DNA of 64,000 bases from Sphyrna mokarran. Taxonomy: Eukaryota. Positions 1,290-30,860 of this stretch are shown here, one piece after another (the stretch's first letter is position 1; each line of letters starts with the position of its first letter). The DNA lies in assembly GCA_024679065.1 (NCBI GenBank), contig JAGIQG010000023.1:10540001-10604000 (forward strand). The letters are read 5' to 3'. Made by a program: the position numbers and the translations under genes. A model generated the notes under the pieces. That model did no database searches, was not told where the DNA came from, and worked only from the letters and a program-made list of their open reading frames with translations.

Positions 1290-1413
1290 ATCAACCACAA
1301 AGTTCAACAATAAGCACAACAAGAAGTACCAACGCTTTTGTCAATACAATAGGAAAAACCAAAGATTCTGTTACCACATCCTTCATCATTTCAACCATCA
1401 ATGATTTTGACAT
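1290..1413 (+). CDS. Gene A (CD300/pIgR-like, activating type): Ser/Thr-rich stalk exon, phase 1-2
   Basis: ttcctctcttttag acceptor, at|gtaagt donor; encodes (D)QPQSSTISTTRSTNAFVNTIGKTKDSVTTSFIISTINDFD; paralog of 23577-23712, 12 nt shorter. Confidence 0.85.
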
Positions 1414-1577
1414 GTAAGTGCTGCAAAAACTGAATTCAACATATGTATACATACTCTCTGTGATGGTTCACAGAACATTGTTAAGGAGAAGTCCTACTCA
1501 ACTGGCTGCAAACTAGTGCCTCATGCTTCAATCAATGTTAGTTGTCAATATTGAGACTCGGTATATGTATACACACT

Positions 1578-1895
1578 AGAATCATAGAATCCCTATGGTA
1601 CAGAAGGAGGCCATTCTGCCCATTGAGTCAGCACTGACAAAACTTCCCAGGCCCTGTCCCCATAACCCCACATATTTACTCTGATAATCTTCCTAATACT
1701 AAAGGGGAATTTAGCACATCCAATCCATCTAACCTACACATCTTTGGGCTGTGGGCAGAAACAGAGCACCCAGAGGAAACCCACTCAGACCCAGACAGAA
1801 TATGCAAATTCCACACAGACGGTTCAATTCTATGGGCTGGAATTGAACCTAGTCCCTGGTGCTATGAGGCAGCGGTGCAAGCAACTGTGTCACAA
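1578..1895 (-). mobile_element. tRNA-derived V-SINE (HE1-like)
   Basis: Reverse complement of the V-domain core (gggtttcctc...gctc...ttc..cccacag) and CR1-type tail (tagaatcatagaatccct). Confidence 0.8.
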
Positions 1896-2259
1896 ACATG
1901 CACATGCCTTCTTGAATCATTGATGTCCATGTAGTGCAGGTACACCCACAATATTATTAGGGAAGGAGCTTCAGGAATTTGACCCAATGATCTTCAAGGT
2001 ACAGTGATATATTTCCAAGTCAGGGTGGTGAACAGCTTGGAGGGCAATCTCCAGGTGGTTCTACTGTTCTTATCCTTCTACACAGTGGAATTCATGAGAT
2101 TGGAATATGCTGCCAATGAGTTTTGCTGAGAACTTGCTGAGCGTCTTGAAGATGATACACACTGCTGCCTGCTCCTCGGGGGTGGAGGAAGAAAACATTT
2201 TCAGAAGGGACAGTAATTATGCAAGCTGAATTATTCTGGACAGTAGAAAGTAGAAAGCC

Positions 2260-3130
2260 CTTGATGTTCTGCTAAGCTATGTCCAAACCCAAGATCAAGC
2301 TATCCAACTCCCTATCATTCTGGTGTATTCCATGTGTCTATCCAATAACTGCTTGAAAGTTTCTAAAGTGTCTGACTCCACTATCACAGCAGTCAGTGCA
2401 TTTCACACCCCAACCACTCTCTGAGTAAAGAATCTACCTGGGAAATCCCTCCTATATCTCCCACCATGAACCTTATAGTTATGCCCCCCAGTAATAGCTA
2501 CATTCACCCGAGGAAATAATCTCTGCATGTCCATTCTATCTATCCCCCTCATTATCTTATAAACCTCTATTATGTCACCTCTCATCTTCTTCTGCTGTAA
2601 AAAGCCCCAATTCCCTCAACCTCTCCTGATGAGACTTACCCTCCAAACCAGGCAGCATCCTGGTTAATCTCTTCTGCACTCTCTCCAATGCTTCCACATC
2701 CTTCTTATAATAAGGTGATGAGAATGGCACACATAATCGAAATGTGGTCTCACCAAAGTCTGGTATAGTTGCAACATAACCCCACGGCTTGTAAACTTAA
2801 ACCTGTTAATAAACTTAAACCTGTTAATAAATTCTAACACACTATAAGCCTTCTTCACAGCTCTATCCACTTGAGTGGCAATCTTCAGAGATCTGTGGAT
2901 ATGAACCCCAAGATCTCCCTGTTCTTCCACATTCCTCAGAACCTTGCTGTTGAACATGTAATCTGCATTCAAGTTTGTCCTAACACAATGAATCACCTCG
3001 CACTTATCAGGGTTAAACTCCATCTGCCACTTTTCTGCCCAGCTCTGCATGCTATCAATGTCTCTTTGCAGCCTACAGGAGCCCTTCACTTCATCCACTA
3101 CTCCACCAATCTTGATGATCATCAGCAAAT
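2260..3130 (-). mobile_element. CR1 LINE 3' fragment
   Basis: ORFs 2664..3128 (WQMEFNPDKCEV...QTLVRPH) and 2403..2585 (RGDIIEVYKIM...FFTQRVV). Confidence 0.9.
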
Positions 3131-3139
3131 CAACCCACC

Positions 3140-3870
3140 CTTCAGCATGGTGTCAAGCTTCTTGAGTATTCTTGGAACTGCAATCATTCAGGCAAATGGG
3201 GACAATTCCATCACACCATTCACTTGTGCCTCATCAATGATGGATAGGCTTTGAGGAGTCAAGAAGTGAGTTACTTGCTGCAGGATTGCTACCCTCTGAC
3301 CTGCTCATGTAGCCATTGTATTTATATGGCTTGTCGAATTCAGCTTCACATCAATGGTAACCATTCGAATGTTGAAAATGGGGTATTCAAAAATGATAAT
3401 GTCATTGAATGTCAAGCAACAATCATAAGTTTTTGGGATGGTGATTGCCTAGCACTTGTGTGGCATGAATGTTATTTGCCACTTGTCAGCCAAGCTGGAT
3501 ATTGTTCAGGTCTTGCTGCATTTGGACATAGACTGCTTCAGTACCTGAGGCGTCGCGAATAGCACTGAACATTGTACAATCATCAGTGAACATCCCCACT
3601 TCTGACCTTATGATGGAAGGAAGGTTATTGATGAAGCAGCTGAAGAAGGTTGGACCGAGGACACTTCCCTGAGGGACTCCTCTATGGATGTCCTGCAGCT
3701 GAGATGATTGACCTCCAACAATCACAACACCTATGTGCCAGATGTGAATCCAACCAACAGAGGGATTTCCCCCTCATTTCCATTGACTCCCGTTTTGCTC
3801 AGGCTCCTTGATGCCACACCCAGTCAAATGTTGCCTTGATGTCAAAGGCAGTCATTCTCTCCTCACTCCC
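3140..3870 (-). mobile_element. Degenerate CR1/L2-clade RT fragment
   Basis: ORF 3486..3725 GVPQGSVLGPT...MFTDDC. Confidence 0.8.
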
Positions 3871-3986
3871 ATTTGCAGAAAACCAGTCTGATTTTACCAG
3901 TATTTATGGGCAGCTCAAAACCTCCTTGATATGAGTGTTTGTTGGAAAGTCATCTGTTTCTTGCACAATTCCCGGTACATTCAGAA

Positions 3987-4954
3987 TGGTATGTTAGCCT
4001 TCATAGGAAGGGGTATAGAATACAAGAGTGGAAGTCTGATGTTGCAAGTGTATAGAACGTTGGTTAGACCTCACTTGGAGTACTGCGTCTAGTTCTGGTC
4101 ACCGTACTACCGGAAGGATGTGGAGGCCCTGGAGAGAGTGCAGAGGAGATTTACCAGGATGCTGCCTGGTATGGAAGGTCTGTCTTACGAGGAAAGATTG
4201 AACGCACTGGGGTTGTTTTCCCTTGAAAGACGTCAGCTGAGAGGGGATCTATTAGAGGTATATAAGATTATGAGGGGTATAGATAGAGTAAATGGTGGTA
4301 AGCTTTTTCCACCATTAGAAATGGATAGAACGCGGCGTCACAGCCTTAGGGTGAGGGGGGCTATGTATAAGACGAATATTAGAGGGCAGTTTTTCACACA
4401 AAGGGTAGTGGGGATGTGGAATGCACTACCGAGTAAGGTGGTGGGAGCAGGCACGCTAAGGTTGTTTAAGGATCTCTTGGACAGCCATATGAGCAGTCTG
4501 CAGATAGAGGGATATAGCAGGACTGTCTAAATATCTTATTTGTTTCCACAGGATATTAGGTCCGCCTTGTTGACCAACAAGGGCATGCATTCGGCAGGTC
4601 GTGCGAGAGCTGCTCTTGGATGTTGCTTCAGGAGTGGCCTAGTGCTTCACGTCGTTAGTGTATGCTTAAACTGGACCATCTGATGGGCACCATGACAGCT
4701 CAGGGATTATCGCTGTTGCTGTGCAGACACTTGGATTTGGGCCTGTGTCTGTGGGAGTTTGCGCGTTCTCCCCGTGGTTGCGTGGGTTTTCTCCGGGTGC
4801 TCTGGTTTCCTCCCACATCCCAAAAATGTGCTCTTAGGCTGATAGGGACCAATTTGTTACCCAATATGTCATTAAGACGTTAGGACGGCGGCGCGGGCTC
4901 GTTGGGCCGAAGGGCCTGTTTCCCGTGCTGTGTTGTTCTTTGTTTGTTCTTTGT
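3987..4954 (+). mobile_element. CR1 LINE 3' end with a V-SINE core embedded in the 3' UTR
   Basis: ORF 4120..4530 nearly identical to the C-terminus of 60071..62587; 3' UTR contains V-domain (about 4745-4830) then gggccgaagggcctgtttcc stem and (ttctttg) tail. Confidence 0.9.
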
Positions 4955-5065
4955 AATCACATTCCTAGGGAGGCTAAAAGTTTCATGCATGTATGTGATT
5001 GAAATCCTCAACATGGGGTTTAAGCATTTTTCCACTGGATTAATTATAATTTCTTGTTTAATCAG

Positions 5066-5181
5066 AGAGGATGAGCTGAAGATTCTCGGTTTCTGGGCAA
5101 TATTCCGCTGGCTGCTCTTTGCTGCTCTGCCTGTTTGCACCGTGTCAGTCACATATTACATACGTTTTACAAGTGAACCAG
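5066..5181 (+). CDS. Gene A transmembrane exon with charged Arg
   Basis: ttcttgtttaatcag acceptor in phase 2 matching the stalk exon; encodes EDELKILGFWAIFRWLLFAALPVCTVSVTYYIRFTSEP; donor cag|gtataa at 5182, or read-through to stop at 5195. Confidence 0.75.
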
Positions 5182-6862
5182 GTATAATTCTTTAAATCTC
5201 ACGATTCTAATATTCAAAATTATTTCATTCACTTGAAAAGCTCAAGCACTTTGAATGTTGCCTAAAAGAAGGCAGTTAATGCAAAACACTCACTGCGTTT
5301 ATAACAAATTAACTACAGAACACAATGACACCATTAAGTTATGGGCTGAATTAGAATGTCCAGTAACTCTCTATGATCAGTATACATTGTCGACAAGTGA
5401 CGTACATTGTGACACGAGTCTCCTTTAAGAAATGGCCGCTGGATGCTGCTTTTAGTTTTGAAGGTGTATGGACGTAACAGCTTTCTTCCTATGGCCATCA
5501 GGTTTTGAATGGACCTACCTTCCATTAAGTTGATCTTTCTCTACATCCCAGCAACAACTACAACACTACATTCTGCACTCTCCTGTTTCCTTCTCAATGA
5601 ATGGTATGCTTTGTCCGTCCAGAGTGCAAGAAACAATACTTTTCACTGTATACTAATACGTGTGATAATGATAAATCAAATCTTTGATGAAGTCGATGTT
5701 TAATTTGAAGTGGAGATTTTGTAAAGCAAAGAGTTTTTCAGCAGCCTGAGAGATTTCTGGCAGTTGAAGTTCTTGCAGATTTGTGGTGGGGTGGGGTGGG
5801 AGGGGGTGGGAAGCGGTTCATTCTCATCTCCCACTTTCAATCTATTGCTGTTTATTACTTAGCTCCATCAATGTTGGCCTTGTCTTCAGCTGTCTCAGCT
5901 CTGGATTTCTCTCTGACATCTGCGAACCCTTATTACGTTAATGGTGCTCTGTAAATACTCGATCAGTGGAAGTCAAGCAGCAAAGATTTTGGGGAGAAAT
6001 TGTTAACATGCTGTCCTTGGACATACCTCAGACTAGCTTTGCACTCTGATGCCTCTCGGGACATCAGCCTAATTGCCTGATTGGTTTAGTGAAGAGTTCT
6101 AATTAACAGGAACCTTCAGTTAAACACAAGTTCTCTACTCCATCCTATTGCCAAATCTCTTTGGCACCAATAGATTTGGTTTGTAGCAACATGAAGACTA
6201 TGGGGGGTGTGGGGGGGAGCGATCTTGAGCCCGCACTCTCTGAAATGCCAACAGAATCACAATCTGTGATTTGCACTGGCGATCTAATCAGTCTCATGCT
6301 CAAAATGGGCCAGGGGTACGACCCATGGGGGAGGAGAGCAAATATGGGGAATGGTGGGAGTTCCGTGAAGATCAGTGGAGATTGGTGAGATGCTGCCAAT
6401 GATGCAGGGGAACGCTGCTGATGTCTGTGTGATGGTGGGGGCCCTGGAGACCTCGATGGTGGGGAGAAGGTGGAAGTTATATTTGAGAGGATACCCCAAT
6501 CTCAGTGCAACCAATTTTGCCGGTGTGTTTAGGCTCCACCCCTCAACATAAAGCACTGGGCCTGGACCCCTCTTCCCCCACTCCACCTCCCACTCTCTGA
6601 AGCGTCCAGGCTCCAGTGTCAGGAACAGTCTGCATCCCTCCCCTGATCCCCGGCTGGAGGGAACGATGCAGCATTCCTGTCCATTCCAGCAGCACTAAAC
6701 CGTTGCCTGAAAGTTCATCACGTACCAGAATGTGACATTATACTTCATCAATGGGAACTGCAAGGAATATTTCTGATATGGTGTTTCAGGCACCAATATT
6801 GTGAAACTTTGCGCAACAATCTCAGGCTTTGTCATCCATTAACTTCTGTGGTCCCTTTCAAG

Positions 6863-6897
6863 AGACAGAATCTCTGCCAATCACACCAGAGACATAA
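6863..6897 (+). CDS. Candidate terminal exon of gene A (short tail ETESLPITPET*)
   Basis: gtccctttcaag acceptor, phase 1 compatible with the 5181 donor; followed by non-repetitive UTR-like sequence with ATTAAA at 7499 and 7536. Confidence 0.4.
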
Positions 6898-8021
6898 CAA
6901 TGAACAGGAAGTTCAAAAGCACTAAAGAAGGAACTGCTCCAACAGTAAACCACAATCTAAAATTCATGCCTGCATTTAAATACAGACCTGAAATAGTGGA
7001 TAAGAGACAGCTCCAACACTACTCCTGGATCAGACATGGTTGCATTATACAGGCTGGCACTCAAGATGTGCCCCAATGCCATTAGCACCATATGGCGAAT
7101 AGAAAGCTCCAGGAGAGTTGAACACTTACGAGGGTTAGAGGTTATGAGAGAGAAATCCCGCCACTTGGACTAGAATATCCCCACCAACCATCTCACCTGC
7201 GCATTTTTGGCCAGCGAAGTACAATTGAAATTTCAATTTATTCATTTGCTACGGTTCAGTTGTTAAAATTCATTCCTTATTCAGTTCTCCAGGCCAACAA
7301 GTGATGGGTTACATCGAAACAGCAACCATAGTCCAAATGGATCCAAGCTTCATTCAAAGGCTGGTCAGAGGATTCATTAAACTTGAGCTGAACGTCCGGA
7401 ATATTTGCTTTGAGAAGTTACTTTTCGACATTATGGAATTTTATACTTTGGAATACCTTATAAAATTCCCAGAAATTGTGTGAAATACTTCATTTATTAT
7501 TAAAGAAGACAATAAGCACTATTAATATTGTTTATATTAAAGAGCAGTTTGTTTCTGTAATTGTCGCAAATGATTCACCAAAATAAGCAGCTCCATGAAG
7601 TGGCAGCATGGCACCACGTTGGCACAGTGGTTAGCACTGCTGCCTCACAGTGCCAGGGACCCGGGTTCGCTTGCTGGCTCAGTATTCTTCATTATTCCAT
7701 ATGGTGCTTAGTTCTATCCACTGAATAATTATTCAGGAAATCTGCCCAATACTGATGTTTGATTTGTAATTGCTGGGGATTATCTTTACGATCCTTTTTG
7801 AAGAAGCAAGTGACATTTGTAATTCTCCAGTCCTCTGGCACCTCCCCTCAGTCTAGAGGAGCTTGGAAGATTATATCCAATGTCCCTGCAATTTCCACTC
7901 TCACTTCTTTCAATATCCTTGGACATATCACACTCAGTCCCAGTGCTTTATCATTGAAATAATCTGGCCGAGGCCGGTATTCCATCTCTCTGTGTTTACA
8001 GTGGTAATTGAGTGCCACTGC

Positions 8022-8484
8022 AGCCATGCCATCTTTGCACTGCTGCCTTACAGCACCAGTAAAACGGGTTCCATTCCCGACTTGGGGCACTGTCCGTGTG
8101 GAGTCTGCATGTTTCCCCATGTCTGCGTGGGTTTCCTCCGGGTGCTCTGTTTCCTTCCTGCAGATCATCGCTAGATCTCCTCATGACCTCATTGAGTATG
8201 AGATCTCCGATTATGTGAGTAGAGGCTCACCCAATAGGGAAGGAGCAGTGGGGTGTAGAAAACCGACTGGATCCACTCTGATCATCAGTGAATAGACTCG
8301 GGACTGATCTGCATTCTGCAGCCATTGATTTTGGACTGTGGGAGAGTAACAGAGCACCCGGAGGAAACCCACGCAGACGTAGGGAAACATGCAGACTTCA
8401 CACAGACAATGACACAAGTTGGGAATGGAACCCATTTTACTGGCGCTGTGAGTAAAATGCCAGCGGTGTAAAGATGGCATGGCT
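8022..8484. repeat. Inverted pair of V-SINE fragments (8022-8163 + and 8336-8484 -)
   Basis: agccatgccatctttgcactgctg... is the reverse complement of ...cagcggtgtaaagatggcatggct; SINE bodies face each other. Confidence 0.8.
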
Positions 8485-8584
8485 AATGTACAATATCTGC
8501 ACAGAAAGAATTCACCCACCAGAAACACTCAATACAATGGAATTAATTGTTCTCTTGATTCTGATGTCTGTGATAATTCTCTAA
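8472..8584 (+). pseudogene. Orphan copy of the gene B 5' UTR/leader exon
   Basis: Aligns to 12027-12125; ATG at 8537 gives MELIVLLILMSV then IIL*; no gtaagt donor. Confidence 0.8.
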
Positions 8585-12012: not shown

Positions 12013-12091
12013 ACTACTCGAGTGAGAGATAGCACGGCTGAAGTACAATATCTGGACAGAGAGAATTCACTCACCAGGAACACTCAGGGCA

Positions 12092-12131
12092 ATGGAGTTA
12101 ATCGCTCTCTTGATTCTAATGTCTGCATCAA
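12092..12131 (+). CDS. Gene B exon 1: signal peptide
   Basis: gcaATGg start, MELIALLILMSAS, a|gtaagt donor, phase 1. Confidence 0.85.
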
Positions 12132-12436
12132 GTAAGTCCATTAAATTTTTTTAATTGATTTTTAGTATTCATAAAAGGTATTTTTGACTATCTCAAATCC
12201 TGAAGACCAGAAGGAGCAACTCACTCAGGCACCAGTTGGTGTCAGCTAAAGTTGAAGCACTCACAGTTTTGCAGACTGTGGCTGTTATTGTGAAAGCCAT
12301 CCGCTGCTCCAGTATCTTCAGAAAATGGTGGTGTAGGGCTAACGTTTTGAGCTAGTAATCCGGCTAATGTTCTGGGAACTTGGGTTCAAATCCCACTGTC
12401 ACAGCTGGTAGGATTTAAAATTCAATTAAGTTATTT

Positions 12437-13893: not shown

Positions 13894-13929
13894 CACATTG
13901 TAAGGCTGGAAGAAACCTAACTTACCTTT

Positions 13930-18890: not shown

Positions 18891-19220
18891 GTTCATGTCA
18901 ATTAACTGGACCCAAGGAGATTCATGGACAATTAGGAGGATCAGTCACTGTGAACTGTCAGTATGATCTGAAATACAAAGACAATGTTAAAGACTGGTGC
19001 AGAGGTGATTATTCCTTGCTGTTTAAATGTTCTGTTGTAGTTTCTACTAAAAATCCGAAAAAAGGAAGAATATCACTGACTGATAACAAAACAGAAGGAA
19101 TATTTTCAATAACGATGGATAACATAATGCAGAGTGATGAAGGACAATACCTGTGTGTGATAGAAACATCAACATTTGAATATAATGAAAAGTTTTCTAT
19201 TAATTTGAAAGTTTCTCAAG
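18891..19220 (+). CDS. Gene B exon 2: V-set Ig domain of CD300/pIgR/TREM type
   Basis: cccaatag acceptor, caag|gtaaga donor, phase 1-1; LTGPKEIHGQLGGSVTVNCQY...KDWCRG...C...GRISLTDNKTEGIFSITM...DEGQYLC...LKVS. Confidence 0.95.
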
Positions 19221-19692: not shown

Positions 19693-20660
19693 AAACAAGG
19701 GGTTTCCGACCTGACTATCTGCTCCTATACTACGGTTATATTTGCGGCTGGTTGTCCCTAGAGAGGGAGTATGCAGTGTCCACAGACTCAAGGCCTTTTG
19801 TATCATTGAGCACCACAGGGACTGGGGTGCCTGGTTGATTCCTTTAATCATATTTTAGTTTAATGTTTTAAGTTTAATTTGTGTTTTGTTTTTGTTGAAG
19901 TCAGCATCCCTCTAAGGTGTTGACCTCTTTACTTTCTCCCTCAGTTCGTTTGATTTGGTTTAATTGGTTTATACAAGAGAGTTGCAATCTCACTGGAGGT
20001 TCCCAGTAGAGGCCCCTCTATGAAGCAGTCCTCCCTTAACATTGGGGACCTGAGGTGGAGGGTGCCGCATGTTGCAGACCCACACAACCTGAGGTTGCAT
20101 CGGTTCATAGACTCCCAAGATGCTTGTCCTTTGTGTGACCCTGAGGACTCTGCTTATAAAGGTTGTTTTAGACTGCATTTCCTTTTAGCTATTTAAAAAA
20201 ATCTTCTGTTACAGTTTCGTTTGCATTTCAGCCCCACAGTCCTGATCTGCAGGAACCTGGGGCAGGGAAGGAGGACCTCCTCATGAACCTGCTCCTCGGC
20301 CTGGCCAAACTTGTCCACAACAGGTCCAGGTGGCAAGTGACAAAGGGGGTCATCCGACCTGATTACCTGTTGCTTTACTGCGGCTACATTCACGGCCAGG
20401 TGTCTCTGGGGAGGGAAGATGCAGTGATCAGGGGCACCACCAAATCCTTCCGTGCCCCTTGTGTACCATGGGGGCTGGAGTGCCTCATTGACCCCTTTAA
20501 TTATATTTTAGTTTGATGTTTTAAGTTGCATTTGTGTTTTGTTTTCACTTAAGGCAGTACAGTGACACAATGGTTAGCAGTTTAACCTTTTAAGGTACTG
20601 ACACATTTACTTTGTCCTTCAGTTCATTTAAATCAGTTAAATTGATTTATACAAAAGAGT
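19693..20660 (+). mobile_element. Two tandem Tx1/L1-type 3' end fragments
   Basis: NLLLGLAKL..NRSR (20283..20516) and DLRWRV motifs; 19693-19978 duplicates about 20340-20660. Confidence 0.65.
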
Positions 20661-21689
20661 TAGAATCTGACTGGTCTGGCAATCCAGTGACCCAGAATAT
20701 TGCCCTGGAGATCTGGGTTCAGATCAAACCACAGCACCTGATACAATTTAAATTCAATTAATAAATCTGGATTATTAAATGGTGACCATGACAACTCTCA
20801 TCAAATATTGCAAAACCCCATTTGGTTCATGAAATCAGACAATGTGGAAGAGGCCCTTTGGTCCATCAAATCTGCACTGACATGTCAAAAACATTTGACT
20901 TTCCACTTAATCCCATCTGCCTGCTCTTGGCCTTTAGTCCTGAATGTTGTGATGTGCAAAATCCAAGATGTGAGGCAACCCACTTCTACCAGCCTCCCAG
21001 GCAGCATATTCCAGACAATCGCTACCCTCTGGTGGCTTTATCTCACATCCCACCTAAACCTCCTGTCCCTCACCTTGAATCTGAGCTCCTCATGAGTGAC
21101 CCTTCAACTGAGGGGAACACCTTCTCCTTATCCATTCTCTCCACGTCCCTCATAATCTTGTACACCCCAATGAGGTCACCCTCTCAGTCTTCTCTTCTCC
21201 AATGAAAACACCCAAGTCTATCCAACCTCTCATCATAACGTAGATAATTCCATCCCAGGCAGCATCCTGGTGAATTTCTGGTTCACTGCCACCCTTACAT
21301 CTTACTCCAAAACCATAGTAATGTCATTGACTCCTAACTCCTCTCTGAAATGGCCCAGCAAACCATTCAGTTCAAGGGAAATTAGGAATGGACAACAGAA
21401 AACTGATCTTGCCCCTAATACTCACACACCAAAAAAGAATTTTAAAAACTTGCCACCTATTTTTTTGTTCATTTGTTGTCCATGGACGTCACTAGCTGGC
21501 CAGCATTGATTGCCCATCCTTAGTTGCACAAGGGCATTTGAGAGTCAATCACATTGCTGTGGCTCTGATTTTGGTGAAGGGTCTTCTGCCTCCAAAGACT
21601 TATTACAGGCCAGATCAGGTAAAAACAGCAGATTTCCTCAGGACATTAGTGAAATAGACTGGTTCTTCCAATAATTGGTAATGGTTTCA

Positions 21690-23180
21690 TAAGAACTAGG
21701 AGCAGGAGTAGGTCATCTGGCCCCTCAAGTTTGCCCTGCCATTCAGTAAGACCACGGCTGATTTTTTTGTGGACTCAGATCCACTTATCCGCTCGCTCAC
21801 TATACCCTTAATTCCTTTACGTTTCAAAAATTTATCTATTTTGCTTTAAATGCATTCAGTGTTTCACTGGGCAGGGAATTCCATGGATTCACACTTTGCT
21901 ATGCCACCCATCTTAGTGTTATCTGCAAATTTTGACACACTACACTTGGTCCCCAATTCCAAATCATCTATGTAAATTGTAAACAATTGCAGTCCCAACA
22001 CTGAAGACATTCTTCCTCAACTCAGTCCTAAATCTGCTTCCCCTTATTTTGAGGCTATGCCCCCTAATCTAATTTCACCCATCAGTGGAAACAAATTCCC
22101 TGCAGTTCCCTTCATAATTTTATATTTTATATATTTCTATAAGATTTCCTCTCATTCTTCTGAATGCCAATGAGTATAGCCCCAGTCCATTCAGTCTTTC
22201 CTCTGCTGTTATTCCTACCAAAATAGATGACCTCACATTTACCAACATTGTACTCCATCTGCCAGACCCACGCCCACTCACTTAGATTATCTATATCCCT
22301 TTGCAGACTTTCAGCATCCTCTGCACACTTCGCTCTGCCACTCAGTGTCAACTGCGAATTCTCACGCACTACACTTGAAGCCCAACTCCAAATTATCCAT
22401 GTAAATTGTAAACAATTGCGGCTCCTATACTGATCCCTGAGGCACATGATTAGTCACTGATCGCCAACCAGAAAAACACCCATTTACCCCCACTCTTTGT
22501 TTTCTGTTAGTTAACCAATCTTCTATCCATGCTAATACATTACCTGTAACACCGTGCACCTTTATCTTAAGCAGCTGCCTTTGGTGCGGCACCTTGCCAA
22601 ATGCTTTCTGGAAATCCAGATATACCACATCCACAGGTTCCTTATTGTCCACTGCACATGTAATGTTCTCAAAGAATTCCATCAAATTAGTCAAACATGA
22701 TCTTCCCTTCATGAACCCATGCTGTGTCTTACCAATGGGACAATTTATATCCAGATGTCTTACTATTTCTTCTTTGATGATAGATTCAAGCATTTTCTCT
22801 GCTACAGAAGTTAAGCTAACTGATCCATAGTTACCCATCTTTTGTCTACCTCTTTTTTTAAACAGTGGCATTACATTTGCTGTTTTCCGATCTGTGGGAA
22901 CCATTCCAGAGTCCAGCGAATTTTGCTAAATTGCCACTAGTGCACTTGCTATTTCTCCCACCATCTCTTTCAGTACTCTGGGATGCATTCCATCAGGACC
23001 AGGAGACTTGTCTAACTTTAGCCCTATTAACTTGCCCAACACTAACTCTTGCGTGATAATGAAAGATTCTAGGTCCTTACCTGCCATAGCCTTCCAGTCA
23101 TCAATTTTTGGCATGTTATTTGTGTCTTTCACTGTGAAGACTGACACAAAATATCTGTTCAATGCCTCAGCCATTTTCTC
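21690..23180 (-). mobile_element. Degenerate CR1 ORF2
   Basis: ORFs 22127..22447, 22425..22904 (QHGFMKGRSCLTNL...LDFQKAF) and 22926..23174. Confidence 0.9.
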
Positions 23181-23855
23181 TTCTCATTTCCAGTCATTAC
23201 ATCCCCGTTTTATCCTCTAAACGTTCATGGTCATCATTAGATTATAATTCCAGGTTTTTTTTATTCAATTCAAATTCTGCCATCTGCCGTGGTGGGATTC
23301 GATCATGGGTTCCCAGATTATTAGCTGAGTTACTGGATTAGTGGATAGTGGATAGTTACTGGATAGTGTCATGATAATACCATTGACCATCGCTTCCCCT
23401 AAAGTGGCTTATTGCTGAGGTTGCTGCCATTGCCAATGACATGTAGCATCAGGAATACATTGGGTGACCCTCTTGTCACCTCCCACTACCACTGCCCAAG
23501 TCTCCCTGCCTCCCAGTCCACCACATACACAAAGTACTTTCAATAATAAAACGTTCAACAAATTCCTCTCTTTTAGACCAACCACAAAGTTCAACAATAA
23601 GCCCGACAACCAGTGCAGCAAGAAGTACCAACGCTTCTGTCAACACAATAGGAAAAACCAAGGCTTCTGTTACCACATCTCTCATCACTTCACCTACCAA
23701 TGACTTTGACTAGTAAGTGCTGCAAAAACTGAATTCAATATATGTATACACACTATCTGTAGTGGTCCACAGAACATTGTTAAGGAGAACTCCTACTTAA
23801 CTGGCTGAAAAGTAGTGCTTCATGCTTCAATCAATGTCAGTTGTCATTATTGAGA
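22285..23855 (+). repeat. Segmental duplication, copy 2 (partner 1-1556)
   Basis: Direct alignment by eye to the window start. Confidence 0.95.
23577..23712 (+). CDS. Gene B exon 3: Ser/Thr-rich (mucin-like) stalk
   Basis: ctcttttag acceptor, ta|gtaagt donor, phase 1-2; (D)QPQSSTISPTTSAARSTNASVNTIGKTKASVTTSLITSPTNDFD. Confidence 0.85.
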
Positions 23856-24994
23856 TGAGCTCCAACTTCATTTTCCAGATTTATTAATTGAATTCAGTTC
23901 CACTAACTGCTGTAACGGGATTTGAATCCATTTCTCTACGCCTATATCCTAGGATTACTAGTCAACTATTGGCACTGAGCTTAGACCTACAGCCTCTATT
24001 GCCTGGGCAGCACATGATTGGGAACATCATTTCTAACCTTGTGTTGGAGGATATTTCATTGATGAAAGAGATAGTTGGGCTTAGGACATAAGGAATTCCT
24101 GCAGCAATGTCCTGGGACCCAAGTTGACAGGGTTCAAAGAACAACAGCCATATTCCTTACTGCTGAACATGACTTCAATCAGAGGAAGGTTTCTCTCCCA
24201 ATTCCCCGCTAAAATCAAAATCAATACTGTGCATCTTTACCATAAATATAGAACTATTCTGCAAATATCTCACCAAGACCTTTTTAAAATGCTGAAACGA
24301 AGAGACACACATAGTATATAAATTTACTTCCATTCCGCAAAACTTAAAATAGATCCTTTTTTGGCTCTGACATTGAACAGATGAACATGAATTGCTGATA
24401 GTCTATATTTTTCTTAAGATGATTAAATAAAACTTATTGAATTATATCTTCCCCCTTCCCTTTGCACAGTGCCATGTTGTGATGTTCTAAATCTATCCTC
24501 TGTAGGATCTCCATGGGCTAATCTGCCAGGGAGAACTATTGTAAAGCACACCAAAAGTAAGCTTCAATATACCCTCATATTCAGCATTTAATCTTCCTCA
24601 GAAGCAAATGGGGACAAGTTCAGGAAATGGAAAACATTTAGTCTGTGTAAAATCAATCCCAGTCACTTACAGCAGTGCTGTCTATCATGGTTAATGGCAG
24701 AATTGCCCAACTCTCTGTCCTGCGTTGGCATTGTGTACAGCCAAATAAATGTAACAGCGTTCTACATGCGTGTGTATGTTCGTATGTCCCACTCGACAGG
24801 AGGGGTAGCCATTGCAACATCCAATTATTCGCATCCTGGATATCAGCTTTTGAACAACCCTTGCTAGTGTTGTAGGAAAAGGAATTTAGCAAGAACACAT
24901 TAAATATCCACGCACCAATCTTTGCACTGCATAGTTCCATGGGCACTGAGTTCTCTTAAATGGCATCAGACAGTATAGCGGGACAGTGATGAGC

Positions 24995-25302
24995 AGGGTG
25001 ACACAGTGGTTGGCACTGTTGTCTTACAGCATCAGGGACTCAGGTTCAATTCCAGCCTCAGCTGACTGTCTGTGCAGAATCTGCAATTCTCCACCTGTCT
25101 TTCTCCAGGTGCTCAGGGTCCCACCCACAGTCCAAAGGTGTACAGGTTAGGTGGATTGACCATGCTAAATTGTCTCTTTGCATCATGGGGACTAGAAGGG
25201 TAAATACATGGGGTCAGGAGATAGGGCCTATGTAGGATTGAGGTCGGTGCAGGCTTGATGGGGCGAATGGGCCCTTCTGGCTGTAAGTGTTCTATGATTC
25301 CT
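24995..25302 (+). mobile_element. V-SINE (HE1-like)
   Basis: A/B boxes, V-domain, ttctatgattc tail. Confidence 0.8.
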
Positions 25303-25691
25303 TCCAAACTCTATCAGGCTGGAATAGATGCTAGTATGGATTAATGTAGCATCATTGTATTTCTCATTTATACTAGATCAGGTTAGAACGGAATCTGTGG
25401 AATTCACTACCCTAAAGTGCAGTGGATGCTAAGACAGTGAGTAAATTTAAGGAGGAGTTAGACAAATTTTTAATTGGGAATGGGTTGAAAGGGTATAGGG
25501 AGAAGGCAGGAAAATGGGGATGAGGAGCATATCAGCCATGATCGAATAGTGGAATGGACTCGATGGGCTGAACGGCCTAATTCTGCTCCTATATCTTATG
25601 AAATTATGAAAAATGAACTTAGGAGGAATGTTGTATAATGATATCAAACCTGTCTGTCTCATGCTCCATATATCACAATTGTATTTTGTAG

Positions 25692-25798
25692 TGACACGGG
25701 CTGGCATGTGATTCTATCGACAGTTATGGGGCTAATTATCCTACTGTTCATCACTGCTCTTATTCTTTATGTGAAACTAAAGCAGCAGAAGAAAAGCG
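25692..25798 (+). CDS. Gene B exon 4: uncharged transmembrane segment
   Basis: attttgtag acceptor phase 2, g|gtaagt donor phase 1; (Y)DTGWHVILSTVMGLIILLFITALILYVKLKQQKKS. Confidence 0.9.
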
Positions 25799-26217
25799 GT
25801 AAGTTCTGTCCAAATCAAAATGTAAAATTACCGGGAAACGTTTTTAATATAACTGTGAAAATTAATTTGCATTTATTTATTCAGTGCTTTCCAGGAACTC
25901 TGGATGCCCCTGAATCACTTAACAGCCAATTAAATATTTTGAAGTGCAGTTACTGTCATGACGTCAGAACTGCATCTAATTTGCGCACAGCAAGATCCCA
26001 CAGACTACAATGATCAAAGCTGGAGAGGGGATGGCCCAGTGGTATTATCGCTAAATCAATGGATTCTATAATCCAACAGGACTTGCTAAGCATGTGATAA
26101 GGAACTACTTAAATCCAAAAATCTATCTTTCAGAAGAAAAATATCCCCATCGAACATATAATAAACTGGTTTCATGCAGTTATCCATGAAACATACATCA
26201 AATATCAATTAAATTTC

Positions 26218-26555
26218 ATAGAATCCCTACAACAGGCCATTTGCTCATTGAGTCTGCACTGACTCTGACAGAGCACCATACCCCGGCTCTCTCCCTCACC
26301 TTCTTCACAAAACCACACACATTTTCATAGCTAACTCATTGAACCGACATGTCTTGAGACACCAAGGGATAATTTATCATGGTTAATCCATCTAACCCGC
26401 ACATCTTTGGACGGTGGGAGGAAACCAGAGCACTCAAAGGAAACCCACGCAGGCACAAGGAGAATGTGCAAATTCCACACACACAGTCACCCAAGGCCAG
26501 AATCGAACCCAGGACCCTGGGGCTGTGAGGCAGCAGTGCTAACCATTGCGCCCCC
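26218..26555 (-). mobile_element. V-SINE (HE1-like)
   Basis: Reverse complement of A/B boxes and V-domain. Confidence 0.85.
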
Positions 26556-26915
26556 CGATAAGTAAATGAAATCCAACAGGAATTCTTGCATGTTTGAATT
26601 CAGTAAAGTTCTGATTATAAACGGATGTTTTGATTATTTTAGAGTCATAGAGATTTACTGCACAGAAACAGGCCCTTCTGCCCAGCTTGTCTATGCCATC
26701 ATTTTTTTTAAACACCTAAGCTAGTCCCAATTGCCCATGTTTGGCCCATATCCCTCTATACGCATCTTACCCATATACCTGTTTAAACACTTTTTAAAAG
26801 ATAAAATTATCTCTACAACTATCTCTGTCAGCTCTCTGTGGAGTCAGTGTCTGGAACATTATAATTATAATTTATAATTATTAATGGTAATTAAAATTAT
26901 AATTTTATTTTACAG

Positions 26916-26947
26916 GCATTGGTGAGGAGAATCCTGGAGTCTGTCAG
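26916..26947 (+). CDS. Gene B exon 5: short cytoplasmic exon
   Basis: ttttattttacag acceptor, cag|gtgaga donor, phase 1-0; (G)IGEENPGVCQ. Confidence 0.8.
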
Positions 26948-28459
26948 GTGAGATGAGGCCACGTCAGGGTCACATGGTAGACCCAAAGAGATAATTGACA
27001 GCTGATTGGATAGATCCTGACGTGACATTCTGAGCACATGGCACTACGGTTACGTGACTCTGGTCCCATGATGTTCAATCATGTGACAAATGCAAACATG
27101 AATGAATTTACTTTATAAAGATTTGGTCATCTGAAGATGCCTGTGAGTTTGAACCAGGTGCTGGTGTCTATGCAGCTCAGAGAGCCAGCAAGTTACTCAT
27201 GAGCAAGCAGACAGGGGCAACACAGGACAGGGAACACTCAGGCACCCCTGAATAAGTGCAAGGAATTCAAATAACTCACTGATAGCTTTCTTTATTCCTT
27301 CACGGTGTGAGGGTCTCACTGGCTAGTCCAGCTTTTTTTGACCATCCTCATTTCCCTTGAGAAGGTGCTGAGGGTGAGGTGCCTTCTTGAATGGCTGCAG
27401 TCAGTGTGGCGATAGTTACACCCATCATGCTGTTGGGGACAGAGTTCCAGGACTTTGACCCAATGACAGTGGAAGGACAGTGATATACTTCCAAGTCAGA
27501 ATGGTGTGTGTCTTGGAAGGGAGCTTGCTGGTGGTGGTGCTCTTGTATTTCTAGGGACTGAAGGTTGGTGCTGTCTAAGGAGCCTTGGTGAGATGCTGCA
27601 GTGACTCTTGCAGGTGGTGCACACGCTACCACTGTGCATCTGTGGAAAAGGGAGTGAATGTTTAAATTGGTGGCAGTTTTCAGTCAAGCGGACTGCTTTG
27701 TCTTGGGTGATGTTAACTTCTTCATGTTGTTGGAGACATAATTAACCGGGCGAGTGGAGACCATTCCATCACACTCCTGACTTGTGCCACATACATGATG
27801 TTCTCCATTTTTAATAGACCTGCTCTCTATCCCTATCTCCTTGGACTATGGTTCAGTCTCTGGTTCCCTGTCAAGATGACAACTCCTTTGGAATTCAGAG
27901 CCGACCTTATTTGCACTATGTCAAAACTGACTGACACAAATTCACCTGAAGCGAACTGAGAAATCACGCAAAGGGCAGTAATCTTAGTACTTGGCACATT
28001 TCTCACAAGGCATCTGAAATGCTGAGCAGTCTCCTGGATTGAAGCTTGTGACAGTGCCCAGTCGATCCAAGTTTTGGGGGAAATGCAGGGTGCTCGCCAA
28101 CTGGACCCAGGATTGGTTGTAAACTGTCCAAGATCATCAGGGAGCCAGTGTGTTGGGAATGAGAGAGAGCATTGAAAACTAAATAGCTTGAGTAGTGGGT
28201 GTGAGAGGTGGAAACCATTATTGGTTGATTAGAGCAGCTAAAGTCCAGGGAGGTAAGACATATGGGGGCAAATGAGTCAAGGGAACCCAAGGTCAGGGCA
28301 AAAGATTAGAACATAAGAACTAGGATCAAGAGTAAACCCTGCTCAGCCATTCAATAAAATCATGGCTGATTTTTTTCAGCTCCATTTACCCACTCATTCA
28401 CCTTTAATTCCTTTACTGTTCAATTAATTGGAAAGTGCGAGAATATTAGTGGCATTAGA

Positions 28460-28612
28460 TTGGGGTAGGCACAGTCAGTAGTCTCACAACACCAGGTTAA
28501 AGTCCAACAGGTTTATTTAGTAGCACAAGCTTTCAGAGTGCTGCTCCTTCATCAGGCACTCAGAAAGCTCGTGCTACCAAATCAACCTGTTGGACTTTAA
28601 CTTGGTGTTGTA
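28460..28612. mobile_element. Palindromic Penelope pLTR remnant with a hammerhead motif on the - strand
   Basis: caacaccaggttaaagtccaacagg / cctgttggactttaacttggtgttg inverted arms; - strand CTGATGA aggagcagcactct GAAA gctt at about 28524-28558. Confidence 0.8.
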
Positions 28613-28629
28613 AAAGACACAAGATTGTG

Positions 28630-28955
28630 GACGGTATGGTGGCACAGTAGTTAGCACTGCTGCCTTGCAGTGCCAGGGACCCGCGTTCAATTCCAACCTC
28701 GGGTTACTCTCTGTGTGAAGTCTGTACATGCTTTCCGTGTCTGCACTGGTCTCTTCCGGATGCTCCGGTTTCCTCCACACATTCCCAAGATGTGTGGTTG
28801 ATTGATGGTTAACTGGCCATGCTAAATTGCCCCTTAATGTTAGGGGGTTTAGGAGGGTAAATATGCAGAGATACTGGGATAGGGCCTGGGTGGGATTGTA
28901 GTCAGTGTGTGCTTGATGAGCTGAATAGCTTCCTTCTGCACTGTTGTGATTCCAT
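28630..28955 (+). mobile_element. V-SINE (HE1-like)
   Basis: A/B boxes, V-domain, tail. Confidence 0.85.
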
Positions 28956-28989
28956 GCAAATTCCTTTTTCCTTTTTCCTTTACTTTTTT

Positions 28990-29480
28990 ATGTAATTCAG
29001 AACAATTCCAAAAAGTCATGACAGATCTCGGAATTCCCTTTTCCTGACTGTTTCCAAATCCCTTAATTCCCTGAGAGACTAAAAGTTTGCCATTCACAGC
29101 CTTAAATTTGATTAGTGGTAGAGCATCCACAACTCTCTGGGATGGAAAATCCCAAAGATTCAAAACCGTTTGAATGAAGAAGTTTCTCTTCTTAGTGCTA
29201 AATGATCGGCCTTTCATTCTGAGAATGTGCCCCTGAGTTTTAGATTTGCCACCCAGCAGAAACCATCTCTTGAGTGCCCACCCATCAAGCCCCTTCTCAA
29301 TTTTGTATTTTTCAATGTGCTGGCCTCTCATCCAGAAGCACAACTTACTCAGCCCCTTATTATTGAGCATCCCCCTCATTCCGGGGACCAATGTAGTGAA
29401 CTGTTGCTGTCTTGCCTCCAATACAAGTATATCCTTTCCTTAATGTGGAGGTGAAAAATGCGTTCAGCACTCCAGATTCA
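28990..29480 (-). mobile_element. Old CR1 3' fragment
   Basis: ORF 28849..29421 has degenerate CR1 C-terminal motifs. Confidence 0.7.
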
Positions 29481-30707
29481 ACCTTTAAACAATAGCAAAA
29501 ATTTCTTTATTCATGTTGTCCAAACCTCATGCTTAACCTTGAGCCTTGATTCAAGTTCCTCAACTTAAAACAGAACAACAGATCAGAAGAACAATGGACA
29601 ACAACAGAACATTTGCAGCTCTAATACTTATTAGTTATGATAAAATCTGTAAGCAGAATTTAATGTCCTTCCCCATGGCAACCATAATGATGGAGGGAAG
29701 GTACAATCACGGGGGAGTCTGCGGTCCCCATTGTCTCCCCCCCCCATCTTCCCCTCCCCCTCAATTGAGTCTGAGGCTGAAAAGCCTGGGAGCATTTTTC
29801 CTAATTCCAGCAGTCGGTTGTGAAGGAACTGTGCTTTTATTGCACAAAATGAAAATAAATAATAACCATAAGCCTGCAGTGAACACAACAGGTCTCAACT
29901 GGGACTAAGAGGTTAATGGATCGTCTTAAGGTCTTACTTTATAAAAGGCTTGGTATACGAGCTCCACCTGGTTGGTTAATTATCAATCCCCAGGGAGCTC
30001 GTATTAAATGAGCCCAACTAGGAGGTCAATTAGTGACTCCCCATTCAGATCATGGAAATTATCACACTGTCCCACTGCTAACTGAGGCTCTCCTGAGTCA
30101 CATCCTGCCACCCAGTGCCTTAGTGGGGTGATTGCCGTGCGGGGAATGTGACAAGCAAAACTATGCAGGGCTGCACGTGAGCTTGGGAAGAGGCAAGGTG
30201 GTTGTTGTCCTTATTTAAAGGCGTTCAGTGCCTGATGGAGGGGCCAGTTGAGAGCTACCCACCTATCTTTGATGCTCCCTCTCCCCATGAGCCCAAACTC
30301 CATTCATCCACATGCTGGAGTCCAGCTACTATACTAGGGCGGGGGTCTCCAAACTATGGCCCGCGGGCCACATCCAGATCGGAGTTTGGAGCCCGCTGTA
30401 CTAGGCCACAAGTGGAGATCTTACCAATAGCAGCCATCACTTCTCCATTCAGTGGAGCTACCAGCATCTGATTGGCTGGTAGCTCTCAGCAGATGGCACT
30501 TCCGCCCCTGGGGTCCTTGATCCCAAGGAAGATCCTCCACTGTCCAGTAAAGTGCCTGACTGACACCTAACACAGCAGCAAAGATGATTCTTGCTGGGTC
30601 AGCATCAGATGGGAGAAACTCCCTTCGCCTTCATCAGACCCCATATGATTTTGGTTAATATTGTACATAATTATGGTGACAGTTTTCCTTTGTTTCAATT
30701 TCCTAAG

Positions 30708-30860
30708 GAAAATCAAGAGCTGATGTATTCCAGTGTGACCGTGGTACCCAAACCTGACATGGAAAATACTTACCTTAATCTTCAGGATCTTACAGCTCAA
30801 AGAAGAGCCAGAAACCAAGAGTCTTCAGAAACTGTGGAATATTCTGCAATTCTTGTCTGA
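30708..30860 (+). CDS. Gene B exon 6: ITIM-bearing tail (completes a 265-aa CD300-like inhibitory receptor)
   Basis: tttcctaag acceptor phase 0; ENQELMYSSV...NTYLNL...TVEYSAILV*; six exons total 798 nt with no internal stop. Confidence 0.9.
   Translation, partial: ENQELMYSSVTVVPKPDMENTYLNLQDLTAQRRARNQESSETVEYSAILV

What the first reader, a model, noticed from the sequence alone, without database searches (positions are those of the whole stretch)
1290..30860. Paired activating/inhibitory CD300/pIgR-like receptor system in a cartilaginous fish
Seen: two adjacent + strand genes share a near-identical stalk exon, but it is followed by unrelated TM exons. Gene A: FWAIFRWLLFAALPVCTVSV with an intramembrane Arg and a short tail with no Tyr motif. 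Gene B: uncharged TM plus LMYSSV, TYLNL and VEYSAI. Known: in CD300, LILR, SIRP and PILR families a basic TM residue recruits ITAM adaptors (FcRgamma/DAP12) and ITIMs recruit SHP-1/2. Inference: A and B are an opposing-signal pair with similar ectodomains, implying this paired-receptor logic exists in the oldest jawed-vertebrate lineage.
Basis: partly seen in the sequence, partly recalled or inferred. Interest (0 to 1): 0.9.

Follow-up and report, generated by a model that had tools for sequence, protein, structure and literature searches.

The report
Paired shark CD300-like immune receptor genes
Two neighbouring shark genes encode look-alike immune receptors, one built to switch cells off and one apparently built to switch them on; this design is already known from skates and is annotated in other sharks and rays.

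Summary
The sequence features are real. Gene B (12092-30860, + strand) is a complete six-exon, 265-codon receptor. It has a CD300/pIgR-type V domain, a Ser/Thr-rich stalk, an uncharged TM, and a tail with two ITIMs and a YxN motif, all kept in 9 elasmobranch relatives.

Gene A is only partly in the window: stalk exon, a 116-nt TM exon, and a last exon giving a 6-codon tail. Its V exon lies upstream and was not seen. The Arg-containing TM exon belongs to a conserved W-x3-R-W-x2-F-x2-L module found in 16 of 180 related proteins (sharks, rays, one sturgeon).

"Near-identical" overstates the stalk match: 87% nt plus a 12-nt indel, no better than the flanking intron at 91%.

In five other species, activating-type and inhibitory-type V domains pair within species (82-98% identity), the mark of paired receptors.

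The nearest annotated relative (Mustelus asterias) skips the TM exon in its model.

The evolutionary claim is not new (skate MDIRs, 2006). This is a new member of a known kind. Unchecked scan notes report similar receptors elsewhere in this genome.

The parts
1..1556 (+). Gene A copy of the shared block: intron before the stalk exon, the stalk exon, and about 140 bp after it. It holds a reverse-transcriptase fragment on the minus strand.
   Evidence: Self-BLAST 1-1556 vs 22285-23855, 88.2%. MAFFT gives 1397/1534 identical, 91.1%. The alignment shows where homology ends.
1290..1413 (+). Gene A stalk exon, Ser/Thr-rich. It enters in phase 1 and leaves in phase 2.
   Evidence: 87.1% nt identity to the gene B stalk with a 12-nt indel. 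tblastn with P0024 gives 62.8% over 43 aa.
5066..5181 (+). Gene A TM exon (116 nt) with the intramembrane Arg: ..GFWAIFRWLLFAALPVCTVSV..
   Evidence: blastp to P0061 59.5%/37 aa, E 4e-11, and to P0002 63%/30 aa. Profile hit E 1.6e-13, unique in the window. Alignment.
7285..7483 (+). Gene A last exon. After the TM exon it reads VLQANK, stop at 7302-7304. If the TM exon is skipped it reads a 66-codon tail, stop at 7481-7483. ATTAAA at 7499 and 7536.
   Evidence: sequence. P0024 tail matches 7256-7480 at 78.7%/75 aa, E 1.3e-34. No Pfam family for the long frame. Poly(A) candidates.
12092..12131 (+). Gene B leader exon, MELIALLILMSAS, phase 1 out.
   Evidence: P0152 residues 1-14 match at 92.9%.
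18891..19220 (+). Gene B V exon: a CD300/pIgR-type V-set domain with Cys22-Cys88 and an extra pair Cys36/Cys46.
   Evidence: Pfam V-set E 2.6e-17. PDB: CLM-1/CD300LF 5e-17, pIgR 1.9e-36 over 5 stretches. P0152 78.4%/111 aa.
22285..23855 (+). Gene B copy of the shared block.
23577..23712 (+). Gene B stalk exon (136 nt).
25692..25798 (+). Gene B TM exon, uncharged helix followed by KLKQQKKS.
   Evidence: blastp to P0002 71%/31 aa and P0051 65.6%/32 aa. Profile hit E 2.7e-15.
26916..26947 (+). Gene B exon 5 (32 nt), reading G-IGEENPGVCQ. Phase 1 in, phase 0 out.
   Evidence: Found by pattern and read on the ruler. It corresponds to IGAESPATCK in P0152.
30708..30860 (+). Gene B last coding exon: ITIM LMYSSV, YxN motif TYLNL, ITIM VEYSAI, stop at 30858-30860. 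AATAAA at 31036.
   Evidence: Tail alignment of 10 rows. Profile hit E 1.7e-27. P0152 84.3%/51 aa.

Best explanation
The stretch holds the 3' half of an activating-type gene (A) and a complete inhibitory-type gene (B). Both belong to the elasmobranch CD300/pIgR-like (CMRF35-like, MDIR-like) receptor cluster.

Shown:
- B encodes a type I receptor: signal peptide, one V domain, a mucin-like stalk, an uncharged TM, and a tail with two ITIMs and a YxN motif.
- A carries a related stalk, then an unrelated TM exon with Arg in a conserved W-x3-R-W-x2-F-x2-L helix, then a tail of about 16 residues without signalling motifs.

Inferred:
- After ligand binding, B's phosphorylated ITIMs recruit SHP-type phosphatases and damp the cell. 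The YxN motif may add Grb2-type input.
- A's buried Arg docks to an acidic TM residue of an ITAM adaptor and activates the cell. The identity of that adaptor is open.
- The two genes share a block at about 91% identity that stops about 140 bp after the stalk exon. Relatives show within-species pairing of V domains. Gene conversion or unequal crossing-over therefore probably keeps the ligand-binding halves alike while the two signalling modules stay separate.
For: - Exon structure, splice sites and phases were read directly.
- V domain: Pfam V-set E 2.6e-17. CLM-1/CD300LF 5e-17 and pIgR 1.9e-36.
- Gene B matches Mustelus asterias CMRF35-like molecule 8 (P0152, 265 aa) exon by exon.
- Both ITIMs and the YxN motif are present in 10 of 10 aligned tails.
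- The Arg TM exon matches 9 proteins by blastp at E 4e-11 to 0.007. It is the only hit in the window to a profile built from other species (E 1.6e-13).
- 16 of 180 collected proteins carry the module. They come from Carcharodon, Scyliorhinus, Hemiscyllium, Mobula, Hemitrygon, Hypanus, Leucoraja, Rhinoraja, Narcine and Acipenser.
- S. canicula XP_038675621.1 (P0061, 198 aa) is modelled as V-stalk-Arg TM-short tail.
- Activating and inhibitory V domains are sister within 5 species, 82.2-98.2% identical.
- Fused models in Carcharodon (P0002) and Mobula (P0013) place an activating-type unit just before an inhibitory-type unit, as here.
Against: - The one run found is not on record as RNA.
- The closest annotated relative of gene A (P0024, Mustelus asterias) joins the stalk straight to the last exon. 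That gives a TM-less protein, and the same frame is open for 66 codons here.
- A word search with the S. canicula TM and tail found only the 2 S. canicula proteins among 2 candidates. No Mustelus model of 109-346 aa with this TM was seen.
- FcRgamma was reported absent from sharks (PMC4016189).
- Within-species pairing of V domains can also come from repeated recent duplication plus module exchange.
- The Mustelus and Mobula sister pairs have only moderate support (83/72 and 85/75).
Confidence: 0.65

Rival explanations
1. Gene A mainly makes a secreted decoy. The 116-nt TM exon is skipped, the last exon is read in its other frame, and the product is V-stalk plus a 66-residue tail with no membrane anchor. 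The pair would then be decoy plus inhibitory receptor, not activating plus inhibitory.
For: - NCBI's model for the nearest relative (P0024, Mustelus asterias CMRF35-like molecule 5, 234 aa) has exactly this join.
- Its tail matches 7256-7480 at E 1.3e-34.
- The frame is open for 66 codons here.
Against: - The TM exon is intact, with AG/GT sites and compatible phases, and it keeps the conserved W, R, W, F, L positions.
- In S. canicula the models include the TM exon, and the long frame closes after 9 codons (P0061/P0156).
- The long tail has no Pfam family.
- Both isoforms could coexist.
Confidence: 0.18
2. Gene A is a dead or truncated copy. It would be a partial duplicate of gene B's intron and stalk exon that landed upstream of an orphan TM exon, with no intact V exon or no expression.
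For: - Only the 3' half is visible.
- The stalk exon is no better conserved than the intron (87.1% vs 91%) and has 8 non-synonymous to 4 synonymous codon changes.
- The intron is full of retroelement fragments.
- A leader-like relic without a donor site lies at 8537-8572, so this locus does hold gene debris.
Against: - The shared block runs to position 1 and so continues upstream.
- All three visible exons have open frames, consensus splice sites and matching phases.
- The TM exon scores E 1.6e-13 against a profile from other species.
- Stalks of such receptors evolve fast in general (established knowledge, not tested here).
Confidence: 0.1
3. The TM Arg is not an ITAM-adaptor dock. The conserved W-x3-R-W helix would serve another partner or role, such as assembly with a different membrane protein or retention and sorting. 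Gene A would then be neither activating nor a decoy.
For: - The motif differs from the Lys-type TM of the mammalian CD300 proteins in the hit list, FLK.P.FL in P0091, P0119 and P0129.
- FcRgamma was not found in sharks in 2014.
- No adaptor was examined here.
Against: - A lone basic residue in the TM together with a very short tail is the standard signature of adaptor-coupled immunoreceptors (established knowledge of KIR, LILR, CD300, TREM).
- The module sits next to ITIM-bearing partners with like V domains in 5 species.
Confidence: 0.07

Closest known systems
CD300 / CMRF35-like molecule family (CD300A and CD300LF inhibitory; CD300C, LB, LD, E activating)
   Same: - A single V domain that is the best single-domain match in the PDB: CLM-1/CD300LF E 5e-17, 65 bits; CD300A 4.2e-13.
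- An extra Cys pair next to the WC motif, a Ser/Thr-rich stalk, and either an ITIM tail or a charged TM with a short tail.
- Clustered genes.
- NCBI names the shark relatives CMRF35-like molecules.
   Different: - The activating TM here uses Arg in a W-x3-R-W motif. The mammalian members in the hit list carry a Lys-type FLK motif.
- Orthology or synteny with the tetrapod CD300 locus was not tested.
- Adaptor and ligand are unknown.
MDIR, modular domain immune-type receptors of the clearnose skate (Cannon et al. 2006)
   Same: - An elasmobranch multigene family of activating/inhibitory receptors with domains like CD300, TREM/TLT and pIgR (PMC3031540, passages read).
- From recall of the 2006 abstract only: MDIR1 has a basic TM residue, and MDIR2 and MDIR3 have ITIMs.
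   Different: - No direct comparison was possible. The 2006 paper is not held.
- No protein named MDIR came back.
- MDIRs have one to six domains (recalled); genes A and B have one.
Polymeric immunoglobulin receptor (pIgR)
   Same: The V domain type. The total score is highest against pIgR because all five of its domains match (1.9e-36, best stretch 34.6 bits).
   Different: - Gene B has one V exon between leader and stalk.
- It has ITIMs rather than a transcytosis tail.
- pIgR itself was reported absent from sharks (PMC4016189).
Paired receptor families KIR, LILR/PIR, SIRP, PILR, Ly49
   Same: Neighbouring genes with like ectodomains and opposite signalling modules. The ectodomains are kept alike within a species.
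   Different: These families have different domain types and separate origins. Coupling to adaptors and phosphatases is shown for them and only inferred here.
TREM / TLT / NKp44
   Same: A related single V domain and a basic TM residue in the activating members. Weak matches: NKp44 4.6e-6, TLT-1 4.5e-5, TREM2 1.1e-4.
   Different: Much more distant than CD300. Their TM residue is Lys (recalled).

Membership tests
CD300 / CMRF35-like | Single membrane-distal V-set Ig domain most similar to CD300 V domains | tested here: met
   Gene B V exon: Pfam V-set E 2.6e-17. The best single-domain PDB match is CLM-1/CD300LF at 5e-17. There is one V exon only between leader and stalk. Gene A's V exon was not seen.
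CD300 / CMRF35-like | Second disulfide (Cys after the conserved Trp, paired with a Cys in C'), as in CD300/pIgR domains (feature recalled) | tested here: met
   Gene B has Cys36 (DWC) and Cys46 (FKC). Both align with the Cys pairs of pIgR domains 3 and 4 in the printed alignments.
CD300 / CMRF35-like | Either an ITIM-bearing tail or a charged TM residue with a short tail | tested here: met
   Gene B has LMYSSV and VEYSAI, conserved in 10 of 10 tails. Gene A has a TM Arg and the tail ..TSEPVLQANK.
CD300 / CMRF35-like | Activating TM of the mammalian type (Lys or Glu) | tested here: not met
   Gene A has Arg in W-x3-R-W-x2-F. The mammalian hits P0091, P0119 and P0129 show FLK.P.FL.
CD300 / CMRF35-like | Orthology or conserved synteny with the tetrapod CD300 locus | not tested
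   There are no flanking marker genes in the window, and no tree with tetrapod CD300, pIgR and TREM was built.
MDIR (skate) | Sequence kinship with the MDIR1-5 cDNAs | not testable with these tools
   No MDIR-named protein was returned. The paper is not held.
MDIR (skate) | Elasmobranch multigene family with activating and inhibitory forms and CD300/pIgR/TREM-like domains | tested here: met
   The family description comes from passages of PMC3031540.
Paired receptors (kind) | Neighbouring genes on one strand | tested here: met
   Gene A exons lie at 1290-7304 and gene B at 12092-30860, both on the + strand.
Paired receptors (kind) | Highly similar ligand-binding ectodomains | tested here: inconclusive
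   Only the stalk (87.1%) and the intron (91.5%) can be compared. Gene A's V exon is outside the window. In relatives the feature is met: 82.2-98.2% in 4 species pairs, plus a Hemitrygon sister pair.
Paired receptors (kind) | Opposite signalling modules that are unrelated in sequence | tested here: met
   No homology remains after about 140 bp past the stalk exon. Each profile hits only its own exon.
Paired receptors (kind) | Both genes expressed and spliced as modelled; physical coupling to an ITAM adaptor and to SHP phosphatases | not testable with these tools
pIgR | Two to five tandem V-like domains and a transcytosis tail | tested here: not met
   Gene B has one V exon and an ITIM tail.

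The most novel reading that the evidence does not exclude
The W-x3-R-W-x2-F-x2-L helix may be an adaptor-docking module older than the split of cartilaginous and bony fishes. It is kept in sharks, rays and at least one sturgeon pIgR-like protein.

In each lineage it would be re-paired again and again with an ITIM partner, by gene conversion of the ectodomain exons.

FcRgamma was reported missing from sharks, so the module may dock to a different or still undescribed ITAM chain.

In addition, gene A may toggle between an activating receptor and a secreted decoy by skipping a 116-nt exon, which shifts the reading frame of one shared last exon.
Probability: 0.2. Interest if true: 0.6.

Novelty: new member of a known kind. 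Interest (0 to 1): 0.35.

Why it matters
If both genes are expressed as modelled, this locus is one more clean case of the activating/inhibitory pairing of innate immune receptors in a cartilaginous fish. It shows that the logic, and the homogenisation of ligand-binding exons between the partners, operates in sharks and rays.

That point was made for skate MDIRs in 2006. Related genes are already annotated in several shark and ray genomes, so the locus itself adds little.

Three things may deserve a specialist's follow-up:
- the strongly conserved Arg-Trp TM module, which is distinct from the mammalian CD300 Lys type;
- the open question of its adaptor in animals where FcRgamma was not found;
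- the possible switch between a membrane-bound and a secreted form, using two frames of one exon.

Tried and rejected
- RNA test of the junctions. Splicing is therefore untested.
- Word search with the S. canicula TM and tail. It found 2 proteins among 2 candidates, both S. canicula, so it gave no wider range.
- Protein atlas on the TM and tail. The best score was 0.77 (a TLT-1 cluster), below the level that means anything.
- Looking for a protein named MDIR with a skate query (29 hits). None carried the name.
- Cannon 2006 and Cannon 2010 are not held. What I say of MDIR1-3 is recalled from the abstract.
- Literature searches. Only 4 held papers name both CD300 and cartilaginous fish, and only 1 names MDIRs. 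I found no held paper on shark CD300-like paired genes or on the Arg-Trp TM module. Subscription journals are mostly not held, and supplements were not asked for.
- ITAM-like exon downstream of the gene A TM exon: none on the + strand between 5183 and 12000.
- pIgR reading: rejected. There is one V exon and an ITIM tail.
- The conserved R, W, F and L of the TM alignment were partly forced by the pattern used to pick the rows. Only the upstream Trp, the blastp hits, and the four proteins that the profile search added beyond its own training rows are free of that choice.
- Scan notes by sequence and by words were blank, which means nothing.

Full report
WHAT IS THERE

The window has no N and about 41-51% G+C. 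On the + strand, gene B can be read in full from the rulers:
- leader 12092-12131 (MELIALLILMSAS, one base carried over);
- V exon 18891-19220;
- stalk 23577-23712;
- TM exon 25692-25798;
- a 32-nt exon at 26916-26947;
- last exon 30708-30860, with AATAAA at 31036.

All introns start with GT and end with AG. The phases fit, and the exon lengths add up to 265 codons.

Gene A is only partly in the window:
- stalk exon 1290-1413;
- TM exon 5066-5181 (116 nt, CAG|GT);
- a last exon starting at 7285.

After the TM exon the last exon reads VLQANK and stops at 7302-7304. The tail behind the helix is therefore about 16 residues with no ITIM or ITAM. No ITAM-like exon lies on the + strand between 5183 and 12000.

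Each exon was searched on its own, and the joined step was left out.

THE SHARED BLOCK

- Self-comparison gives one long match between the genes: 1-1556 against 22285-23855, 88.2% with gaps counted. By MAFFT, 1397 of 1534 aligned bases are identical, 91.1%.
- The block reaches position 1, so it continues upstream of the window. It ends about 140 bp after the stalk exon.
- Beyond that point the only similarities between the two genes are interspersed repeats.
- The stalk exon is the least conserved part: 108 of 124 aligned bases (87.1%), a 12-nt indel, and 8 non-synonymous against 4 synonymous codon differences in 40 codons. The intron scores 91.5% upstream and 90.9% downstream.

"Near-identical stalk exon" is therefore too strong. 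The block looks like a neutral duplication or conversion tract.

WHAT THE PARTS ARE

V exon of gene B:
- It is a V-set domain (Pfam E 2.6e-17).
- Against solved structures the highest total score goes to pIgR (1.9e-36), because all five of its domains match. The best single stretch there is 34.6 bits.
- The best single-domain match is CLM-1/CD300LF (about 5e-17, 65 bits). CD300A follows at 4.2e-13. FcmuR, NKp44, TIM, TLT-1 and TREM2 lie between 4e-6 and 1e-4.
- The extra Cys pair (Cys36, Cys46) aligns with that of pIgR domains 3 and 4.

Relatives of the V exon:
- A full HMMER scan of 1.84 billion representatives gave 2282 proteins at E up to 0.001, of which the best 150 were listed.
- The closest single-V proteins are from sharks: Mustelus asterias CMRF35-like molecule 8 (P0152, 265 aa, 79%) and molecule 5 (P0024, 234 aa, 77%), both on one 58.7-Mb contig. 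Others come from Scyliorhinus, Heterodontus, Pristiophorus and Pristis.
- No protein is identical to the window's, so its species is not in these collections.
- P0152 maps exon by exon onto gene B: leader 92.9%, V 78.4%, stalk 74.4%, TM 78.8%, last exon 84.3%. Its short IGAESPATCK segment corresponds to the 32-nt exon.

THE TWO SIGNALLING MODULES

The last exon of gene B aligns with the tails of 9 relatives from 9 species. Across all 10 rows:
- the first ITIM, [LV]xYxxV, is present in 10 of 10;
- the YxN motif is present in 10 of 10, with Thr before the Tyr in 9 of 10;
- the C-terminal VxYSx[ILV] is present in 10 of 10.

TYLNL is not an ITIM. It fits the Grb2-type pYxN pattern (established knowledge, not tested here).

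The TM exon of gene A matches 9 of the 150 proteins by blastp. The best are S. canicula P0061 (59.5% over 37 aa, E 4e-11) and Carcharodon P0002 (63% over 30 aa), and the weakest has E 0.007.

A pattern search found the module in 10 of 156 proteins. A profile search found it in 16 of 180. The carriers are Carcharodon, Scyliorhinus canicula, Hemiscyllium, Mobula, Hemitrygon, Hypanus, Leucoraja, Rhinoraja and Narcine. One sturgeon protein, Acipenser oxyrinchus P0036, matches more weakly (E 3.6e-5 in that small set).

A profile made from 12 such segments, none from the window, hits one place in the window: the ORF that holds the exon.

One caution applies. The rows were picked with a pattern that demands R, W, F and L, so only the upstream Trp, the independent blastp hits, and the four proteins that the profile search added beyond its own training rows are free of that choice.

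The mammalian CD300 proteins in the list carry a different, Lys-type TM.

PAIRING IN RELATIVES

- Carcharodon P0002 and Mobula P0013 are fused gene models. In each, a V-stalk-Arg TM unit is followed by a V-stalk-uncharged TM-ITIM unit, the same order as A then B.
- S. torazame genes scyTo_0008610 and scyTo_0008611 are numbered consecutively. The first (P0092) reads the Arg-type TM exon in a wrong frame, and the second (P0153) is inhibitory.
- I built a maximum-likelihood tree of 19 V domains, all the rows I chose, with none dropped. Activating-type and inhibitory-type domains are sisters within Carcharodon (100/100, 98.2% identical), S. canicula (99/94, 85.0%), Hemitrygon (99/97), Mustelus (83/72, 89.0%) and Mobula (85/75, 82.2%).
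- Gene B groups with the two Mustelus proteins (97/97) but is only 77-79% identical to them.
- Not every activating gene is paired in this way. S. canicula P0156 and S. torazame P0092 form their own clade and are only 60-65% identical to the inhibitory genes of their species.

The simplest reading is that ectodomain exons are exchanged between neighbours within each lineage while the TM and tail modules stay apart. Repeated recent duplication with module swapping would give the same tree.

WHAT SPEAKS AGAINST THE ACTIVATING READING OF GENE A

- The nearest annotated relative, P0024, joins the stalk directly to the last exon and has no TM. Its 66-residue tail matches 7256-7480 (E 1.3e-34).
- Because the TM exon is 116 nt long, skipping it shifts the frame. 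In the window that frame is open to 7481-7483. The long tail has no Pfam family.
- In S. canicula the corresponding frame closes after 9 codons, and the models include the TM exon.
- I could not test which form is made. I worked beside that part afterwards.
- Gene A's V exon, expected about 3.1-3.4 kb upstream of the window by analogy with gene B, was not seen.

ADAPTOR

A 2014 survey reports no FcRgamma, pIgR or FcRL in several shark genomes (PMC4016189; abstract and passages read). That survey used the limited data of its time and I could not repeat it. The partner is open.

WHAT IS KNOWN

[quoted passage not shown] 2006. That paper is not held. From recall of its abstract, MDIR1 has a basic TM residue and MDIR2 and MDIR3 have ITIMs.

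So the claim that paired-receptor logic exists in cartilaginous fish is about twenty years old, and NCBI already annotates such genes in many elasmobranchs. In the held library, only 4 papers name both CD300 and cartilaginous fish. None that I listed treats the Arg-Trp TM module or within-species pairing of V domains. Most subscription journals are not held, and supplements were closed and not asked for.

Unchecked scan notes report further CD300/pIgR-like genes and Arg-TM receptors up and down this chromosome piece.

VERDICT

An inhibitory receptor next to an adaptor-type partner is the best reading (0.65). A secreted-decoy form (0.18) or a dead copy (0.10) cannot be excluded without RNA and the upstream V exon.
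- It is a new member of a known kind. Interest is modest (0.35).

Noticed in passing
window 48975-49316, 51530-51892, 54519-54887 (+): Three tandem V-set exons (Pfam E 6.7e-14, 1.2e-11, 1.7e-13) sit in repeats of about 2.6-3 kb that are 82-85% identical. The middle copy reads ISGCKK where the others read IWWCK, so it lacks the conserved Trp, and it may be a pseudo-exon. No Arg-type TM, inhibitory TM or ITIM-tail exon for them lies in the window.
   Followed up: partly
window 8472-8572 (+): A copy of gene B's 5' UTR and leader (84.8% to 12027-12125) reads MELIVLLILMSV but has no GTAAGT donor. It is probably a relic first exon between genes A and B.
   Followed up: partly
P0036 (Acipenser oxyrinchus KAK1138222.1), residues 273-295 and 402-425: A sturgeon pIgR-like protein carries IWSYLRWILF..., a weaker match to the elasmobranch Arg-Trp TM profile (E 3.6e-5 and 3.9e-4 in a set of 180; name). 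This hints that the module predates the split of cartilaginous and bony fishes.
   Followed up: no
P0002 (Carcharodon carcharias) and P0013 (Mobula hypostoma): These public gene models run an activating-type receptor into the next inhibitory-type receptor. They are probably fusions of two neighbouring genes. P0092 (S. torazame) reads the Arg-type TM exon in a wrong frame.
   Followed up: partly
window 7285-7483 (+): One last exon can be read in two frames, depending on whether the 116-nt TM exon is included: 6 codons or 66 codons. The long frame is the one used in the Mustelus model P0024.
   Followed up: partly
window 56299-59010 (-) and 60074-62596 (-); also 178-904 (-) and 22428-23183 (-): Two long retroelement ORFs of 904 and 841 codons with reverse-transcriptase-like text lie on the minus strand. 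Shorter fragments of the same kind sit inside the block shared by genes A and B, so the block was copied after that insertion. They were not scanned against Pfam.
   Followed up: no
window about 46560-48150: A long low-complexity stretch rich in CA/TG-type repeats gives spurious ORFs full of His, Thr and Cys on both strands.
   Followed up: no
The tool describes the filter as one that also trips by chance. I left the stretch out of all later searches.
   Followed up: no
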